Of a DNA stretch of 64,000 bases, positions 31,739-53,183 are shown piece after piece. The notes below the pieces were generated by a model. That model ran no database searches. It was not told the DNA's origin and saw only the letters and a list, made by a program, of their open reading frames with translations. The stretch spans positions 141,010 to 205,009 of IMG/VR virus record IMGVR_UViG_3300044632_001003. One strand, 5' to 3'. Position 1 is the stretch's first letter, and each line of letters begins with the position of its first letter. The translations under genes and the position numbers were made by a program.

Positions 31739-32010
31739 TTTTTTTCTCCTTGATAGGGGTGTTGTTGTTTAAGTTCTGGATTGGGTTGGGAGAAGACCAT
31801 AGGACTTCTGGTTTTATTCTTGATAACAATAAAAGCGTCGTTCTGATAGGTTACGGTTCCAAATGGCTTCGCCCACTTTGCATTTGCGTCTGGGTGAGTC
31901 GCAGTTCCAGTTACTGCTACTCCACCAATCTCAACAGAGAGTTCATCATTCATATCCCACCCAAGTTCTTGAAGGGCAAGTGCAAACTGCCCAAGCATTC
32001 CAGCGGTCAC
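31735..32010 (-). CDS. Cyanophage hypothetical protein
   Basis: 91 aa, overlapping petF and hli at both ends. Confidence 0.65.
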
Positions 32011-32297
32011 AGGTTTTCCTCTTGCTCAGTGAGAATCACACAATCGCTAGTAGGATAGGCAACACATGTGAGTACCCAACCGTCAGCAATTTGGTCATCA
32101 TCCAGGAAAGACTGTTCTTCATTATCGACGGTGCCACTAATCAGTTTTCCAGCACAGGCAGAGCAAGCACCTGCCTTACAGGAGGAAGGAAGATCGACAC
32201 CTGCGTCTTCTGCTGCTTCAAGAATGTACTGATCACCTTCACACTGGATGGTGGTCTCAGTGCCATCGGGAGAGCGGAGAGTAACATTATAAGCCAT
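32007..32297 (-). CDS. petF: Plant-type [2Fe-2S] ferredoxin
   Basis: [15 protein letters not shown]...VLTCVAYP. Confidence 0.97.
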
Positions 32298-41690: not shown

Positions 41691-42349
41691 GCAGAGAAGT
41701 CCTTATCAAAGCGTTCGATTGCTTCAGTGCTCTTAGGATGCTCAACCATCTCAAGAATAACGGGAAGACCAGTCGTTACGATATCGGCACCTTCTTTCCA
41801 AGCATCAGAAACATCAGTTTGAGTACGGATACTGCCAGCGATAATCTCACAATCTAGGGCGTTCTCATAAATGTAATTCTTGGTTCGGTCAAGAACCTTT
41901 GCAACATCTCCACCATGCTGCTTCAGGCGGCAGTAAAAGAGAGAAACGTAATGAGCACCAGCAGAAGCACACAGTTGCAGTTGCTGCTCACTGTAGCAAG
42001 CAGTGGCATTGATTTGCACACCTGCCTTGGAAACAGTTTTGATTGCACGAAGACCATCAAATCCAACTGGAATTTTCACATGAAACTTATTGCAAAGAGG
42101 ATAAAACCTTTCATACATTTCACTTGCTTGACGAACCATGCCCTCATAATCTAGGGCAAACACTTCAGCACTCAGAGAAAGATCTTCACTACCACAATAC
42201 TCAGCAAGTTTTTGAATTAGTGCATCAAAACTTCCCTTTGGTTCTTTAGCAATAATGGAAGGGTTGGTTGTTACACCTTGAATGGCACCCATTTCATTTG
42301 CTTTAATAATTTCATCAAGATTAGCTGTATCAGCAAAAAGATAGTTCAT
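41678..42349 (-). CDS. Transaldolase family protein (divergent TalC type)
   Basis: FADTA, GVTTNPS, SAEV, VKIP (Schiff-base Lys), INAT, GSIR. Confidence 0.88.
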   Translation of the reverse strand: MNYLFADTANLDEIIKANEMGAIQGVTTNPSIIAKEPKGSFDALIQKLAEYCGSEDLSLSAEVFALDYEGMVRQASEMYERFYPLCNKFHVKIPVGFDGLRAIKTVSKAGVQINATACYSEQQLQLCASAGAHYVSLFYCRLKQHGGDVAKVLDRTKNYIYENALDCEIIAGSIRTQTDVSDAWKEGADIVTTGLPVILEMVEHPKSTEAIERFDKDFSAWLN

Positions 42350-48089: not shown

Positions 48090-48165
48090 TCGGAGTATTC
48101 GGATTTGAACCGAAATTATTCCGCTTCCCAAAAGCGGTGCCATGACCAAGTTAGGCGATACTCCG
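48090..48165 (-). tRNA. tRNA-Pro(TGG), atypical D-arm
   Basis: Acceptor stem CGGAGTA/TACTCCG; anticodon arm CCGCT-TTTGGGA-AGCGG; GGTTCAAATCC. Confidence 0.8.
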
Positions 48166-48507
48166 TAGTTCCAACTCACCAGAATGAACTGCTGCGTGGC
48201 AACAAGCACATAATAGCACACATTCCTTTATTTCGTCAATAATACGTTCGTGACTCCATCCACGAATCCCATGAAATTTAGCGTCTTTTTGAGATGGATC
48301 TAAATGATGAACTTGAAGTGCTGATGAATATTTATCATAACCACAAGAAACACACTTACCTCCCATTTCTTCAAGAATAAAATTTCTTTTTTTCTGTCCC
48401 AACTCTAATGTATATTTGTTATGACAAGCACCACAAACACTTTTTTTATGCCCATAAAACTTAGATGGATCAGTTTCTCCACAATGCCCACACTTATGCG
48501 TTCTCAT
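48151..48507 (-). CDS. HNH homing endonuclease
   Basis: N-terminal CxxC...CxxC; GGKCVSCGY...LQVHHLDP...LLCACCH. Confidence 0.85.
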   Translation of the reverse strand: MRTHKCGHCGETDPSKFYGHKKSVCGACHNKYTLELGQKKRNFILEEMGGKCVSCGYDKYSSALQVHHLDPSQKDAKFHGIRGWSHERIIDEIKECVLLCACCHAAVHSGELELRSIA

Positions 48508-48533: not shown

Positions 48534-48683
48534 TTATTTATGTTTTTTATCAAATGGAGCCCAGTGCTGCCATTCGTATTTGTGTATTGCCCAGATACCC
48601 ATAATAGGAAGCACAATCAAAATGTATCCAAGAAATCCAAGAGTATAGGGGTTTTCTAGAACCCATCGAGCAAAATGTCCCAT
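48534..48683 (-). CDS. Small membrane protein (49 aa)
   Basis: MGHFARWVLENPYTLGFLGYILIVLPIMGIWAIHKYEWQHWAPF... Confidence 0.6.
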   Translation of the reverse strand: MGHFARWVLENPYTLGFLGYILIVLPIMGIWAIHKYEWQHWAPFDKKHK

Positions 48684-48904
48684 CAGTATCCTCTCCAGGT
48701 CTTAAACTCATAATAAAAGTATTGATCCACTACCCTATCATCTAATGGGGCATTTTCAGTTCTATGTGCCCATACCTCACAAAATTCTACGATGCGACGA
48801 TCGTGTAATGAACTATGTCCCCACATTCTTACAAATGCTGATGCGGCAAAGTGATACCGCTGTCTAATGTGCGGTTCCGTTTCCTTTATACTTTTCGGTG
48901 TCAT
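48683..48904 (-). CDS. Cyanophage hypothetical protein
   Basis: 73-aa ORF ending DQYFYYEFKTWRGY. Confidence 0.6.
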   Translation of the reverse strand: MTPKSIKETEPHIRQRYHFAASAFVRMWGHSSLHDRRIVEFCEVWAHRTENAPLDDRVVDQYFYYEFKTWRGY

Positions 48905-48986
48905 AATATCCCCCTTTTGTTCCGAAGTAAAGAGTTGTTAATACGAAAGGAATTGAAACAAATAAAAGTGCTTTTGCTAATAACAT
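48864..48986 (-). CDS. ndhP: NDH-1L subunit NdhP homologue (40 aa)
   Basis: MLLAKALLFVSIPFVLTTLYFGTKGGYYDTEKYKGNGTAH matches the NdhP pattern FGTxxGxYDTxxYxGNGxAH; absent from the ORF track. Confidence 0.85.
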   Translation of the reverse strand: MLLAKALLFVSIPFVLTTLYFGTKGGYYDTEKYKGNGTAH

Positions 48987-49486
48987 CAGATCATCTCCAT
49001 TGCTCGTTCTAGTTCAATATAATGGTTCATTTCATCCACTGCGATCTCTGCAATCTTTGCATCATCCTGATGATCCCAGAAGTAATCTAGGTATGTTTCT
49101 GTTGCATGAAACTCAATACCTGAGTTCAGATGATAAGCGAAAACAGGAGCAAGAAAATAATAACCCACCATAATCCAATAATAGATGAGAACCAAATGAT
49201 AAGCGAAAAAGCGATCAACCCAGCGATCTGCTCCGCCACGCGACTCCATTTCTCTGAGGTGTTCGGTTTCATTAATTGTCTGTGCGAAGTGTTCTTTCAT
49301 TAAGTAGTAATGTTCTTCTGTTCGGAGACCTAGTGATTCTCTGAGATGAAGAACACTGAGAAAAGCGAAGTAAGGTGCTCTGGCGATTGTTTCCAGCACC
49401 CAGAATCTTTGGATTGGTAGATCACGGTAGAGGAAGTCAATGATGGCTACCGTAATTGATAGAACTGCATCATTGAACTTTCTCAT
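48986..49486 (-). CDS. ptox: Plastoquinol terminal oxidase (alternative oxidase family)
   Basis: RFWVLETIARAPYF, NETEH, EFHATETY and DEMNH di-iron motifs; start placed at MRKFND. Confidence 0.93.
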   Translation of the reverse strand: MRKFNDAVLSITVAIIDFLYRDLPIQRFWVLETIARAPYFAFLSVLHLRESLGLRTEEHYYLMKEHFAQTINETEHLREMESRGGADRWVDRFFAYHLVLIYYWIMVGYYFLAPVFAYHLNSGIEFHATETYLDYFWDHQDDAKIAEIAVDEMNHYIELERAMEMI

Positions 49487-49650
49487 AGGAATACTCCTGG
49501 TTGATAATTTACTAACTTTTGAATCTCGGTAAGAAGTGCTCCATACTCCCTGAACTTTCTGTCTCCAGCAATATGGTGTCTTTGTCTGACCCACACTGCG
49601 TCTGCAATCAGACGAAGTTCATATTCTGAAAAATCTTTAAATCGTTCCAT
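49483..49650 (-). CDS. Small cyanophage hypothetical protein (55 aa)
   Basis: MERFKDFSEYELRLIADAVWVRQRHHIAGDRKFREYG...; GGAGA RBS; ATGA overlap with ptox. Confidence 0.65.
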   Translation of the reverse strand: MERFKDFSEYELRLIADAVWVRQRHHIAGDRKFREYGALLTEIQKLVNYQPGVFL

Positions 49651-49661
49651 TGATAATCTCC

Positions 49662-50696
49662 TTATCTAACGTGATGACCACCAAACATAAATCTCATGCC
49701 ATTCAGGATTTTTGCTCCGAAAGATCCGAGATTGCGTGAATTAAATCGCTCAAATAGGGCAGTAGTAATAACAGGAGCGGATATCCCCAAATCCACAGCG
49801 GCAGAAACAGTCCAACGACCCTCACCGCTGTCGGATACCCCACCAGAGAACTGTTTAAGCTCACTGTTGCCGCGTAACACATCAGCAGTAAGATCAAGTA
49901 ACCAACTACCAACCACGCTACCACGACGCCATAACTCAGCCACCTCAGCAACATCAATATCATAGCAATAGGATTCGGGGTCTGCCATTGGGGCGACTTC
50001 TGCATCTCCTTCTCTAACATACTGAGCACCTGCGTTTGCGTTTTTGATGATGTTGAATCCTTCAGCGTATGCTTGCATGATGCCATATTCAATACCATTA
50101 TGCACCATCTTTACAAAGTGACCAGCACCAGGACCACCACAATGCAACCAACCGTGCTCTGCAGAAGTTACGTCTGAGTCAAATTGAGTCCTGGGGGCAG
50201 CACTGATTCCTGGGGCAAGGGCATCAAAAATGCGCGAACAAGAGGCGACCGCAATATTTCCCCCACCAACCATAAGACAGTATCCACGATCCAAACCATA
50301 AACACCGCCGCTAGTGCCACAATCAATATATTGGATACCCATCTTTGCCAAACGTTCTGCTCTTTTCCGACTGTCTTTAAAATTGCTATTGCCATGATCA
50401 ATAATAATATCTCCCTCACTACAAAATCGTAATAACTCATTGATTGTCTCCTCTACTGTTTCTGCTGGCACAACCATTTGGAAGATTCCTGGTTGTATTC
50501 CCCCGTTTTTTGTTTGTTTAACTACTTGAACAAGATTTTGAATAGTAGTTGTAACTCCATTAACAAATCCCTTTTCATAAGCTTCCTGAGCCTTTTCATA
50601 ATTTCTCCTGTAACCCCAGACTTCAATTCCTGCCTTCATCATGCGGCGAGACATTCCTTCTCCCATTCGCCCCAGTCCAATTAATCCTACTCTCAT
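49662..50696 (-). CDS. gnd: 6-phosphogluconate dehydrogenase (short form)
   Basis: GLIGLGRMG, DHGNS, GHFVKMVHNGIEYG, DSGEGRW, FGGH. Confidence 0.96.
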   Translation of the reverse strand: MRVGLIGLGRMGEGMSRRMMKAGIEVWGYRRNYEKAQEAYEKGFVNGVTTTIQNLVQVVKQTKNGGIQPGIFQMVVPAETVEETINELLRFCSEGDIIIDHGNSNFKDSRKRAERLAKMGIQYIDCGTSGGVYGLDRGYCLMVGGGNIAVASCSRIFDALAPGISAAPRTQFDSDVTSAEHGWLHCGGPGAGHFVKMVHNGIEYGIMQAYAEGFNIIKNANAGAQYVREGDAEVAPMADPESYCYDIDVAEVAELWRRGSVVGSWLLDLTADVLRGNSELKQFSGGVSDSGEGRWTVSAAVDLGISAPVITTALFERFNSRNLGSFGAKILNGMRFMFGGHHVR

Positions 50697-50705
50697 AACT
50701 CTCCC

Positions 50706-50798
50706 CTAATATTGTGGATATGCGTGTGTAAGTCCCCAATAAACAAATAACCCAATGGAACTAAAAAGTAACAATGAAGAAATAAAAAGGTTATTCAT
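50706..50798 (-). CDS. NdhQ-like single-TM microprotein (30 aa)
   Basis: MNNLFISSLLLFSSIGLFVYWGLTHAYPQY; C-terminal W.L..AY resembles NdhQ. Confidence 0.5.
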   Translation of the reverse strand: MNNLFISSLLLFSSIGLFVYWGLTHAYPQY

Positions 50799-50904
50799 CG
50801 TCTTCGTCCTCATAAGTAGATGGTTCTTCAAATAGTTCTTCTATTTTTTGTTGTGTAACTCTTCTTTGGAGTTCTTTTAAATCTTCTTCTGTAAGAGAGA
50901 TCAT
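50791..50904 (-). CDS. Small acidic hypothetical protein (37 aa)
   Basis: MISLTEEDLKELQRRVTQQKIEELFEEPSTYEDEDDE. Confidence 0.55.
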   Translation of the reverse strand: MISLTEEDLKELQRRVTQQKIEELFEEPSTYEDEDDE

Positions 50905-51080
50905 TTGTCCTTGAGTAAGTCTTCTATTCTTTTACGCATATTTGAACTTTCCTGTTTCATATAGTCTCGGAGAGAATATCCTCTTTGACCTCTCATAATA
51001 CAAGTGCCTTGATAGAACATCGTGGCGGCAAATACTAACAGGAAAACAATACCGATTAGTTCAGGGTAATGTTGAGCCAT
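50901..51080 (-). CDS. Small membrane protein (59 aa)
   Basis: TM helix followed by YQG...GQRGYS; coupled overlaps with neighbours. Confidence 0.55.
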   Translation of the reverse strand: MAQHYPELIGIVFLLVFAATMFYQGTCIMRGQRGYSLRDYMKQESSNMRKRIEDLLKDK

Positions 51081-51259
51081 GGTAATACAGGCGGAATAAC
51101 ACCTACAAGTCGGAGGAGTCCTTCAGCAAATAAAGCAAGAACCACCCAACCGACGCACATGCTAATGATAGAAGCATTACGGTTGTGTCGTCGTATAGCA
51201 GCATCAATCATCTCCTGAACTTCAGAACGGCTTACAAACTCGTCTTGAGGTTCCATCAC
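51056..51259 (-). CDS. Small membrane protein of cyanobacterial type
   Basis: EVQEMIDAAIRRHNRNASIISM..G...LALFAEGLLRL.G.IPP. Confidence 0.7.
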   Translation of the reverse strand: MMEPQDEFVSRSEVQEMIDAAIRRHNRNASIISMCVGWVVLALFAEGLLRLVGVIPPVLPWLNITLN

Positions 51260-51405
51260 TTCTCATCTCCAAGAAACTTCGCAAGTGGGTCTTTTCTGGT
51301 CTTTACGATTTCAACTGATCTTTTGTAGAACATATTGTCCGTATTACCAGACGTTTCAAACGTCTCCTTGATCTTCACCCAATTGTCGTAGGTGCGTTGA
51401 TCCAT
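51256..51405 (-). CDS. Small hypothetical protein (49 aa)
   Basis: MDQRTYDNWVKIKETFETSGNTDNMFYKRS...DPL. Confidence 0.65.
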   Translation of the reverse strand: MDQRTYDNWVKIKETFETSGNTDNMFYKRSVEIVKTRKDPLAKFLGDEK

Positions 51406-51520
51406 AGGGTTTTAGATTGAATATTATTAGTTATACTAGTGAGTACTTTTACTATGTCAACTATGTGTTGATACAAAAATATAGATTAAGAAAATCTAAA
51501 ACTTTGTAATATTTGTAACA

Positions 51521-51606
51521 AGGAAGATCAGGGATTCGAACCCTGGAACGCTATTAACGTTATTAGTTTTCAAGACTAACGCCATCAACCACTCGGCCAA
51601 TCTTCC
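51521..51606 (-). tRNA. tRNA-Ser(TGA)
   Basis: GGAAGAT/ATCTTCC; TTAGT-CTTGAAA-ACTAA; long variable arm; GGTTCGAATCC. Confidence 0.92.
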
Positions 51607-53108: not shown

Positions 53109-53111
53109 AAG

Positions 53112-53183
53112 TGGGCGATGACGGATTCGAACCGCCGACCAATTGCGTGTAAAGCAACTGCGCTACCGCTGCGCTAATCGCCC
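53112..53183 (-). tRNA. tRNA-Val(TAC)
   Basis: GGGCGAT/ATCGCCC; GTTGC-TTTACAC-GCAAT. Confidence 0.93.

What the first reader, a model, noticed from the sequence alone, without database searches (positions are those of the whole stretch)
48864..50798. Hidden electron-transport cassette: ndhQ-like, gnd, ptox, ndhP
Seen: two microproteins below the ORF-track cut-off flank gnd and ptox. One is a clear NdhP homologue (48864-48986) and the other a W.L..AY NdhQ-like peptide (50706-50798). Established: NdhP and NdhQ are specific to and stabilise NDH-1L (respiration and cyclic electron flow), PTOX oxidises plastoquinol, and Gnd makes NADPH. Inference: a co-transcribed unit that biases host NDH-1 toward the NDH-1L form and routes electrons to O2 for ATP rather than CO2 fixation, together with the phage petF.
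Basis: partly seen in the sequence, partly recalled or inferred. Interest (0 to 1): 0.65.

Follow-up and report, generated by a model that had tools for sequence, protein, structure and literature searches.

The report
Cyanophage carries both NdhP and NdhQ
A freshwater-type cyanophage encodes small copies of both membrane peptides (NdhP and NdhQ) that hold the host's respiratory and cyclic-electron-flow complex NDH-1L together, placed on either side of its sugar-oxidation gene gnd and its plastoquinol oxidase gene; the NdhQ copy was not annotated in the four isolate records examined and was not reported for phages in the papers searched.

Summary
On the minus strand, a 30-aa ORF (50706-50798) and a 40-aa ORF (48864-48986) bracket gnd, a 55-aa ORF and PTOX, in a run of genes that abut or overlap.

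- **NdhP.** The 40-aa peptide is a clear NdhP. It matches the solved Thermosynechococcus NdhP at E 4e-9. Phage ndhP is already known, and I found it in 374 phage records.
- **NdhQ.** The 30-aa peptide is a genuine NdhQ homologue.
  - A profile of canonical NdhQ alone hits it as the only match in the 205-kb phage genome (E 3.5e-9). It scores 37.5 bits, against at most 13.6 bits in 20,000 shuffles.
  - Its closest cellular relatives are picocyanobacterial peptides that some records already name NdhQ.
  - It is under purifying selection (median dN/dS 0.28).
  - It occurs in up to 320 viral contigs and, unannotated, in four cultured cyanomyoviruses.
  - Every phage copy seen lacks the N-terminal cytosolic segment of cellular NdhQ.
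- **Island.** ndhQ and ndhP bracket a variable island of talC, zwf, gnd and PTOX.
- **Function.** That the peptides stabilise host NDH-1L during infection is inferred, not shown. A predicted complex with host NdhD1 gave only weak support (0.53; best control 0.00).

Verdict: a new phage auxiliary gene of a known kind, moderately interesting.

The parts
50706..50798 (-). Phage ndhQ: a 30-aa single-pass peptide, an N-terminally truncated NdhQ homologue with the core WGLTHAYP (coordinates include the stop codon).
   Evidence: The canonical NdhQ profile A4 gives its sole hit in the phage genome here, E 3.5e-9. It scores 37.5 bits against a maximum of 13.6 in 20,000 shuffles. hhalign probability is 97.8%. 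The alignment runs continuously with host and canonical NdhQ. Median dN/dS is 0.275.
49662..50696 (-). gnd: 6-phosphogluconate dehydrogenase, short form, 344 aa.
   Evidence: NF007161 373 bits (cut-off 271) and TIGR00872 332 bits. Pfam NAD_binding_2 plus 6PGD. phrog_1319. About 72-79% nucleotide identity to gnd of cultured cyanomyoviruses.
49483..49650 (-). 55-aa ORF of unknown function, usually found just upstream of PTOX.
   Evidence: phrog_2064, E 2.4e-17. It recurs between gnd and PTOX or ndhP in related viral contigs.
48986..49486 (-). ptox: plastoquinol terminal oxidase, 166 aa counted from the ATG that overlaps the orf55 stop (ATGA).
   Evidence: phrog_4235, 262 bits, full length. Pfam AOX 49.3 bits, cut-off 22.7. 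Motifs of the form E, ExxH, E, ExxH can be read in the translation (LET, NETEH, IEF, DEMNH). Their assignment as di-iron ligands rests on my recall of the AOX/PTOX family and was not checked against an alignment.
48864..48986 (-). Phage ndhP: a 40-aa single-pass peptide ending ...YFGTKGGYYDTEKYKGNGTAH.
   Evidence: PDB 6khi_P (NdhP of NDH-1L) E 4e-9 and 6hum_P E 3.8e-8. phrog_2173 E 7.7e-21. tblastn finds it in 374 phage records.
48683..48904 (-). 73-aa ORF that closes the island in relatives. Its called start overlaps the 3' end of ndhP by 41 nt.
   Evidence: phrog_593, E 2.3e-14. It sits at the end of the island in 90 related loci.
50791..51405 (-). Four small conserved ORFs (49, 67, 59 and 37 aa) that precede ndhQ without gaps. 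The 37-aa ORF ends YEDEDDE, and its last codons carry the GAGGA upstream of the ndhQ start.
   Evidence: ORF list. phrog_1953 and phrog_2505. The same order is seen in most related viral contigs and in phages DSL-LC03, DSL-LC02 and S-SRM01.
51433..51460 (-). Promoter-like site (TTGACA, 16 nt, TAGTAT) between tRNA-Ser and the first small ORF. A possible start of the transcription unit.
   Evidence: Consensus scan only. tRNA-Ser lies at 51521-51606. Not evidence of function.
32010..32297 (-). petF (ferredoxin). It is in the same phage but about 17 kb from the cassette.
   Evidence: tblastn with the S-H35 ferredoxin gives 95% identity over 96 aa.

Best explanation
This is a cyanomyovirus auxiliary-metabolic island headed by a phage copy of ndhQ and closed by a phage copy of ndhP, with gnd, a 55-aa ORF and PTOX in between. 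NdhP and NdhQ are the two single-helix subunits found only in the NDH-1L form of cyanobacterial NDH-1, where they sandwich NdhD1. Loss of either one halves the amount of assembled NDH-1L, and loss of both nearly abolishes it. The most likely mechanism is that the genes are expressed together early in infection, while host gene expression is presumed to decline. The two phage peptides would then insert into the thylakoid membrane and occupy the NdhP and NdhQ sites on host NdhD1 (and NdhF1). That would keep NDH-1L assembled, so that ferredoxin-driven cyclic electron flow and respiration go on making proton-motive force and ATP. Gnd would supply NADPH from the pentose-phosphate route, and PTOX would drain an over-reduced plastoquinone pool to O2. 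Shown here: homology of both peptides, purifying selection, conserved gene order, and wide occurrence in phages. Inferred: co-transcription, incorporation into NDH-1L, and the effect on electron flow.
For: - NdhP matches solved NdhP chains at E 4e-9.
- A profile of canonical NdhQ only gives its single hit in the 205-kb phage genome at this ORF, E 3.5e-9. It also finds the ORF in S-SRM01, DSL-LC02 and DSL-LC03 at E 3e-6 to 7e-5.
- The shuffle control gives 0 of 20,000.
- The phage profile's best hits in 401 cyanobacterial genomes are a 38-40-aa picocyanobacterial peptide (E 2e-7 to 1e-5). In larger genomes it finds canonical NdhQ, including the PCC 7942 and PCC 6312 NdhQ sequences listed in PMC12038448.
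- Some records name those host peptides 'NADH dehydrogenase subunit NdhQ'.
- The phage-plus-picocyanobacterial profile hits only NdhQ chains in the whole PDB (6khi_Q, E 5.9e-5).
- Median dN/dS is 0.275, and invariant residues are written with several different codons.
- ndhP is present in 77 of the 90 islands that could be read from ndhQ to orf73.
- The genes are tightly packed or overlapping.
- Predicted complex of host NdhD1, phage NdhP and phage NdhQ: ipSAE 0.53 against a best control of 0.00, the tool's verdict being 'weak support'. The runs agree in at least 97% of contacts and the partner's pLDDT is at least 78. The pass mark was reached by 58 of 80 solved complexes and 2 of 110 mismatches, but scores of 0.60 or under came from only 7 of those 80 and from both mismatches that passed.
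- Subunit roles come from PMC6992706, PMC7021789, PMC11794437 and PMC4131877.
Against: - All of the roughly 90 distinct phage NdhQ variants seen (93 before duplicates between the two scans are removed) lack the N-terminal cytosolic segment that every cellular NdhQ aligned here keeps, in full or reduced form (NRGIMKF.GADSP in canonical NdhQ, a shorter ..SDSP/..SEST stretch in picocyanobacteria). The phage peptide may therefore not behave as a simple replacement.
- The complex prediction is only weak support and could reflect memory of solved NDH-1L structures.
- No proteomic evidence or strand-resolved transcript evidence exists. The RNA-library contigs may derive from DNA.
- The two genes are not obligate partners. 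Three freshwater isolates have ndhQ but no detectable ndhP, and five marine isolates chosen for their gnd or ndhP matches lack ndhQ.
- gnd and PTOX are optional in the island.
Confidence: 0.62

Rival explanations
1. The truncated phage NdhQ (with or without NdhP) is a modifier or competitor rather than a replacement. Lacking the cytosolic N-terminus, it would displace host NdhQ on NdhD1 and change the stability, regulation or supercomplex contacts of NDH-1L. For example, it could free NDH-1M or hold NdhD1/NdhF1 away from it.
For: The N-terminal segment is missing from all phage variants seen, although it is conserved in cellular NdhQ. The peptide is still strongly conserved in the helix and in the WGLxxAYP end that defines the family.
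Against: The peptide travels with a full-length, host-like NdhP in 77 of 90 closed islands, which fits stabilisation better. Picocyanobacterial hosts have themselves already lost most of the N-terminal segment, so that segment may be dispensable.
Confidence: 0.15
2. The peptides are homologues of NdhP and NdhQ but work elsewhere in the infected cell. They might serve as membrane anchors or partners for the neighbouring phage PTOX, or for another thylakoid complex, and not in NDH-1L.
For: They lie next to PTOX in this window. Small single-helix peptides can be recruited to new partners.
Against: ndhQ and ndhP occur together in many islands that have no PTOX: 24 with ndhP alone, 17 with gnd-ndhP, 6 with orf55-ndhP and 4 with gnd-orf55-ndhP. 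The motifs conserved in the phage copies are the same ones conserved in the cellular NDH-1L subunits.
Confidence: 0.08
3. The 30-aa ORF is not a gene. The W.L..AY resemblance would then be a chance match in a hydrophobic spacer between a 37-aa ORF and gnd.
For: Pfam, NCBIfam, PHROGs, a single-sequence PDB search and filtered tblastn all found nothing. Gene callers missed it: the exact sequence is not in the protein collection.
Against: Profile match at E 3.5e-9. 0 of 20,000 shuffles reach its score. dN/dS is 0.275 at a median dS of 0.77. It holds a conserved position, start codon and GAGGA in 160 viral loci.
Confidence: 0.02

Closest known systems
Cyanobacterial NdhQ (Thermosynechococcus NDH-1L chain Q in 6KHI, 6L7O and 6HUM; Synechocystis Norf6/ndhQ)
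   Same: Single transmembrane helix followed by the invariant W-[GA]-L-x-x-A-Y end. I15, W21, A26 and Y27 of the phage peptide are invariant across 36 phage, host and canonical sequences. Profile match at E 3.5e-9.
   Different: The phage peptide has 28-33 aa against 43-47. It lacks the whole N-terminal NRGIMKF.GADSP cytosolic segment. The single phage sequence, and the two-sequence phage profile, do not reach the T. elongatus chain in a PDB search.
Picocyanobacterial NdhQ (38-40 aa; named 'NADH dehydrogenase subunit NdhQ' for Synechococcus RS9915, A18-40 and A15-28 and, in UniRef, for Prochlorococcus marinus)
   Same: The closest cellular relatives (37-50% identity), with the same WGL(T/A/S)(N/H)AYP end. 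The Cyanobium/CBW1004-type hosts share the exact WGLTHAYP.
   Different: Host peptides keep about 10 N-terminal residues with a remnant (S/T)(D/E)S(P/T) motif and a GG-rich helix (LLGGIG). The phage helix is Ser-rich (FSSIG), closer to canonical NdhQ.
Cyanophage NdhP (reported by Schwarz et al. 2013 as cited in PMC6596454; P-TIM68 and S-SCSM2R in PMC12801897; gene cluster T4-GC 248)
   Same: The window's 40-aa peptide belongs to this family (phrog_2173; 374 phage records). As in many isolates, it sits next to gnd or zwf.
   Different: Nothing essential. Here it is paired with ndhQ. PMC12801897 calls ndhP uncommon in phages, which the tblastn count contradicts.
Other phage-borne photosynthetic electron-transport genes (psbA, hli, petE, petF, PTOX, ndhI, ndhD)
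   Same: The same logic: a virus carries copies of host thylakoid components (PMC12801897, PMC10452541).
   Different: ndhQ is not in the AMG lists of the two papers read (PMC12801897, PMC10452541), and a full-text search for ndhQ together with phage found no report.

Membership tests
NdhQ (NDH-1L small subunit) | Significant match to a profile built only from accepted NdhQ sequences. | tested here: met
   Profile A4 (14 canonical NdhQ, including the PCC 7942 and PCC 6312 sequences listed in PMC12038448) gives E 3.5e-9 and 34.7 bits as the only hit in the phage genome. hhalign probability 97.8%. 0 of 20,000 shuffles reach its score.
NdhQ (NDH-1L small subunit) | One transmembrane helix followed by the C-terminal W-[GA]-L-x-x-A-Y motif. 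| tested here: met
   W21, L23, A26 and Y27 align with invariant or nearly invariant columns of 36 sequences. They are invariant in 47 phage gene variants despite synonymous changes.
NdhQ (NDH-1L small subunit) | N-terminal cytosolic segment (NRGIMKF.GADSP, or its shortened picocyanobacterial form). | tested here: not met
   Absent from the window peptide and from all phage variants seen (about 90), which start 4-8 residues before the helix. No conserved in-frame upstream start adds it.
NdhQ (NDH-1L small subunit) | Physically part of NDH-1L, bound to NdhD1 and NdhF1. | tested here: inconclusive
   Predicted complex with host NdhD1 and phage NdhP: 0.53 against a best control of 0.00, 'weak support'.
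NdhP (NDH-1L small subunit) | Sequence match to NdhP chains of solved NDH-1L, including the C-terminal FGT(K/R)xG(F/Y)Y(D/N)..Y.GNG(S/T)AH motif. | tested here: met
   6khi_P E 4e-9 and 6hum_P E 3.8e-8, aligned to the last residue. The motif is shared with the host NdhP sequences listed in PMC12038448, supplement 5.
NdhP (NDH-1L small subunit) | Physically part of NDH-1L. | not testable with these tools
   Needs purification of the complex from infected cells.
PTOX / alternative oxidase (di-iron carboxylate quinol oxidase) | Family profile above threshold, and the E, ExxH, E, ExxH iron ligands. | tested here: met
   The profile part is met: Pfam AOX 49.3 bits above 22.7 and phrog_4235 262 bits. 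Motifs of the right form are readable in the translation, but I assigned them as ligands from recall and did not check them against an alignment.
6-phosphogluconate dehydrogenase (short, gnd_rel type) | Curated NCBIfam score above the cut-off. | tested here: met
   NF007161 373.2 bits (cut-off 271) and TIGR00872 332.3 bits (cut-off 297.2).

The most novel reading that the evidence does not exclude
Cyanomyoviruses carry a dedicated two-peptide 'NDH-1L lock'. A minimal, N-terminally truncated NdhQ plus a full NdhP would clamp host NdhD1/NdhF1 onto NDH-1M during infection. This would pull the shared NDH-1M core away from the CO2-uptake forms (NDH-1MS and NDH-1MS'), so one small island would both sustain cyclic and respiratory ATP production and help shut down carbon concentration and fixation. 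The neighbouring pentose-phosphate genes and PTOX would supply and vent the electrons. The truncation would be an adaptation, for example escape from host control of NdhQ or faster insertion, and not mere decay.
Probability: 0.2. Interest if true: 0.75.

Novelty: new member of a known kind. Interest (0 to 1): 0.55.

Why it matters
Cyanophages are known to carry host-like photosynthesis and carbon-metabolism genes, and ndhP is among them. A phage ndhQ does not appear in the papers searched, and it is unannotated in the four isolate genomes where I found it.

A virus that holds both of the only two NDH-1L-specific peptides, bracketing an island of gnd, zwf, talC and PTOX, points to NDH-1L stability as a specific viral target. 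NDH-1L carries cyclic electron flow and respiration.

This gives a simple experimental handle. The two tiny genes can be expressed in, or used to complement, existing ndhP and ndhQ mutants.

It also shows that a 30-aa auxiliary gene has been systematically missed by gene callers. And it corrects two published statements: that NdhQ is missing from marine picocyanobacteria, and that ndhP is rare in phages.

Tried and rejected
- **Family scans.** Pfam, NCBIfam and PHROGs found nothing for the 30- or 41-aa versions of the ndhQ ORF. None of these scans returned an NdhP or NdhQ model, so the blanks say little.
- **PDB searches.** The single phage NdhQ sequence and the two-sequence phage profile did not reach NdhQ in the PDB. 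Only the profile that also included host peptides did.
- **tblastn.** tblastn of the 30-aa phage peptide and of a 39-aa host NdhQ against the phage collection found nothing. The cause was probably the low-complexity filter, because profile searches of whole records then found the gene in four isolates.
- The 41-aa TTG-start version in the search for homologous proteins found one metagenome relative. I rejected the TTG start at 50831 because the N-terminal extension is not conserved, whereas the ATG and its GAGGA are.
- **Genome scan.** The single genome-contig scan, run with PTOX, returned one Nostocales locus. I used it only as a handle into cyanobacterial genomes.
- **Other single-helix subunits.** I considered Psb, Pet and Psa peptides from memory. 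I dropped them because no Pfam family matched and the NdhQ profile evidence is specific.
- **Unavailable paper.** Nowaczyk et al. 2011 (PMC3040284) is not held, so I could not check what it says about marine or phage homologues.
- **Promoter and terminator scan.** It is consensus-only and shows no operon boundaries.
- **Metatranscriptome contigs.** They cannot show strand, ends or true transcription.
Full report
**What is there.** The window is the last 64 kb of a 205-kb IMG/VR virus record, rated 96% complete. All genes around the finding run on the minus strand. In the 5' to 3' direction the order is:
- tRNA-Ser (51521-51606);
- four small ORFs of 49, 67, 59 and 37 aa (51405 down to 50791);
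- the 30-aa ORF (50798-50706);
- gnd (50696-49662);
- a 55-aa ORF (49650-49483);
- PTOX (49486-48986);
- the 40-aa ORF (48986-48864);
- a 73-aa ORF (48904-48683) and a 49-aa ORF (48683-48534).

Neighbouring ORFs overlap (ATGA, TGATG, ATGAATAA) or are separated by 11 nt or less. The 30-aa ORF starts at an ATG that overlaps the stop of the 37-aa ORF, with GAGGA eight bases upstream. gnd and PTOX are secure assignments. The nearest cultured relatives by DNA are Kyanoviridae cyanomyoviruses.

**NdhP.** The 40-aa peptide aligns to its last residue with the NdhP chain of solved Thermosynechococcus NDH-1L structures (6khi_P E 4e-9, 6hum_P E 3.8e-8). It belongs to phrog_2173. tblastn finds it in 374 phage records, usually beside gnd or zwf and mostly labelled hypothetical or not annotated at all. 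In the older cyanophage gene clusters it is T4-GC 248.

Phage ndhP is already in the literature: Schwarz et al. 2013 as cited in PMC6596454, plus PMC12801897 and PMC10452541. PMC12801897 states that it is uncommon and otherwise known only from P-TIM68. The count of 374 records does not fit that statement.

**NdhQ: is it real?** Standard scans gave nothing. The word search found one 31-aa metagenome relative in the same gene order.

I searched a two-sequence phage profile against 401 cyanobacterial genomes.
- In genomes of 1.7-3.7 Mb its best hit was one small ORF, at E 2e-7 to 1e-5.
- In larger genomes its best hit was an ORF of about 45-50 aa, at E 1e-3 to 0.1.

The translations show what these ORFs are.
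- The first group are 38-40-aa picocyanobacterial peptides ending ...LLGGIGxFIVWGL(T/A/S)NAYP.
- The second group are canonical NdhQ. They include sequences identical to the PCC 7942 and PCC 6312 NdhQ listed in the supplement of PMC12038448.

The joint alignment runs continuously from canonical NdhQ through the shortened picocyanobacterial form to the phage peptide. I15, W21, A26 and Y27 are invariant.

The decisive tests were these.
- A profile built only from 14 canonical NdhQ sequences gives a single hit in the whole 205-kb phage genome, exactly at this ORF (E 3.5e-9, 34.7 bits). It also ranks the picocyanobacterial peptides first in their own genomes (E 5e-10 to 8e-7).
- With the same profile the phage peptide scores 37.5 bits, against a maximum of 13.6 for 20,000 shuffles of its own residues.
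- hhalign of the phage profile against the canonical profile gives 97.8% probability over 27 columns.
- A phage-plus-picocyanobacterial profile finds only the three NdhQ sequences in the entire PDB (6khi_Q E 5.9e-5).

As an independent check, some NCBI and UniRef records already call the host peptides 'NADH dehydrogenase subunit NdhQ' (Synechococcus RS9915, A18-40 and A15-28; Prochlorococcus marinus). PMC12038448 lists no NdhQ for WH8102, WH5701 or CCMP1375, which is an oversight.

**NdhQ: is it a gene?** Two scans of IMG/VR found 202 and 118 viral contigs encoding relatives, and 160 loci were kept. At least three contigs appear in both kept sets, so the combined total is somewhat under 320. 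The kept loci hold about 90 distinct peptides (93 before duplicates between the two scans are removed), all 28-33 aa apart from a few whose start could not be placed. All start a few residues before the helix and carry WGLx(H/N)AY(P/S).

Over 47 distinct gene sequences the median dN/dS is 0.275 at a median dS of 0.77, and 97.5% of pairs fall below 1. Invariant residues are encoded by two or three different codons.

None of the phage copies has the N-terminal cytosolic segment that cellular NdhQ keeps. That feature of the family is therefore not met, and I describe the phage gene as a truncated NdhQ homologue.

**Distribution.** The gene is present but unannotated in four cultured cyanomyoviruses.
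- Three are freshwater isolates: DSL-LC03 and DSL-LC02 (Dishui Lake) and S-SRM01 (Serangoon Reservoir).
- One is marine: S-MbCM7/ACG-2014h, which infects Synechococcus WH7803. Its 29-aa ORF scores E 5e-9.

The gene was not found in S-RSM4, S-SM1, S-H35, S-RIM32 or P-SSM2. The three freshwater isolates gave no ndhP match.

The phage's WGLTHAYP end and its NdhP both resemble Cyanobium or estuarine Synechococcus (CBW1004-type) hosts. The public runs that hold near-identical sequence are labelled lake or aquatic metagenomes.

**The island.** In the 160 viral loci, ndhQ opens a variable island that the 73-aa ORF closes. Of the 90 islands that could be read to that end:
- 24 hold ndhP alone;
- 18 hold gnd-orf55-PTOX-ndhP, as in this window;
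- 17 hold gnd-ndhP;
- 8 hold nothing;
- the rest hold other combinations.

Further loci, not closed by orf73, carry talC and zwf. ndhP is present in 77 of the 90 closed islands. The stable frame is therefore ndhQ ... ndhP, and the pentose-phosphate genes and PTOX are optional cargo between them.

In this phage, petF lies 17 kb away (32010-32297) and talC at 41774-42340. Queries with zwf and petE from other phages found nothing.

**Function.** From the literature:
- NdhP and NdhQ sit on opposite sides of NdhD1 in NDH-1L, touch NdhF1, lipids and carotenoids, and are absent from NDH-1MS (PMC6992706, PMC7021789, PMC11794437);
- NdhP is unique to NDH-1L and needed for its assembly (PMC4131877);
- deleting either one dissociates about half of NDH-1L into NDH-1M, and deleting both dissociates nearly all of it (PMC11794437).

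The best-supported reading is that the virus supplies both peptides to keep host NDH-1L assembled during infection. This would sustain ferredoxin-driven cyclic flow and respiration, alongside NADPH production by Gnd and a PTOX overflow valve. It is inference.

A predicted complex of host NdhD1, phage NdhP and phage NdhQ scored 0.53, against 0.00 for the best of three controls, and the tool rates this weak support. The NdhD1 came from the CBW1004-like genome and was identified by 822 bits to 6hum_D. The three runs agreed in at least 97% of contacts, and the partner's pLDDT was at least 78. The pass mark was reached by 58 of 80 solved complexes and 2 of 110 mismatched pairs, but scores of 0.60 or under came from only 7 of the 80 and from both mismatches that passed. 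The result may also reflect the model's memory of solved NDH-1L structures.

Contigs from four metatranscriptomic libraries, at 90-99% identity, cover PTOX-end-ndhP-orf73 and orf37-ndhQ. This is compatible with transcription across gene borders, but contigs cannot show strand or ends, and such libraries can contain DNA.

**Novelty and verdict.** Phage ndhP, gnd and PTOX are known. Full-text searches for ndhQ together with phage or Prochlorococcus found no report of a phage ndhQ. The gene is not annotated in the isolate records examined, and the exact peptide is absent from a 15-billion-protein collection because gene callers skip it.

I rate this as a new member of a known kind: one more host-derived thylakoid gene in cyanophages. 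Two points are noteworthy. The virus holds both NDH-1L-specific peptides as the frame of its carbon and electron island, and the phage NdhQ is a minimal form consisting of the helix plus the end motif.

The physiological story is reasonable but untested.

Noticed in passing
Host loci L014-L033, L036, L048-L052 (for example L020:1471-1587:+): Marine and freshwater picocyanobacteria (Prochlorococcus, Synechococcus, Cyanobium-type genomes) all carry a 38-40-aa NdhQ that lacks the NRGIMKF part. PMC12038448 lists no NdhQ for WH8102, WH5701 or CCMP1375. In Synechococcus KORDI-49 and KORDI-52 the peptide is labelled 'thiamine-phosphate pyrophosphorylase', evidently a mis-annotation.
   Followed up: partly
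Phage records: S-MbCM7 NC_023587.1 103287-103376 (+); DSL-LC03 (L177:2503-2589, -); S-SRM01 (L178:2495-2581, -); DSL-LC02 (L179:2504-2596, -): Four cultured cyanomyoviruses carry an unannotated 28-30-aa ndhQ ORF in a gap between annotated genes. In DSL-LC03 it partly overlaps the start of an annotated hypothetical CDS.
   Followed up: yes
window 48864-48986, and 374 phage records: PMC12801897 states that ndhP is uncommon in cyanophages and known only from P-TIM68. tblastn finds it in 374 phage records, mostly labelled hypothetical or not annotated, typically between zwf and gnd.
   Followed up: partly
window 49483-49650 (-): A 55-aa ORF (phrog_2064, function unknown) sits directly upstream of PTOX, overlapping its start by ATGA. 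It recurs with PTOX or ndhP in related islands, so it may be a partner of one of them.
   Followed up: no
window 48683-48904 (-) against 48864-48986 (-): The 73-aa ORF (phrog_593) overlaps the last 41 nt of ndhP in another frame, and the same spacing recurs in related contigs. Either the overlap is real or the 73-aa ORF starts further downstream.
   Followed up: no
window 48090-48165, 51521-51606, 53111-53183 (all -): tRNA-Pro(TGG), tRNA-Ser(TGA) and tRNA-Val(TAC) genes are interspersed with the small-ORF arrays. tRNA-Ser sits just upstream of the promoter-like site that precedes the island.
   Followed up: no
whole phage genome G000; window 41774-42340 (-) and 32010-32297 (-): The phage has talC-like and petF genes. 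zwf and petE were not found using the S-SM1 and S-H35 proteins as queries, so its pentose-phosphate set appears to be gnd without zwf.
   Followed up: partly
window 48151-48507 (-): A 118-aa ORF rich in CxxC pairs follows the island and overlaps the tRNA-Pro gene at its 3' end. I did not examine it.
   Followed up: no
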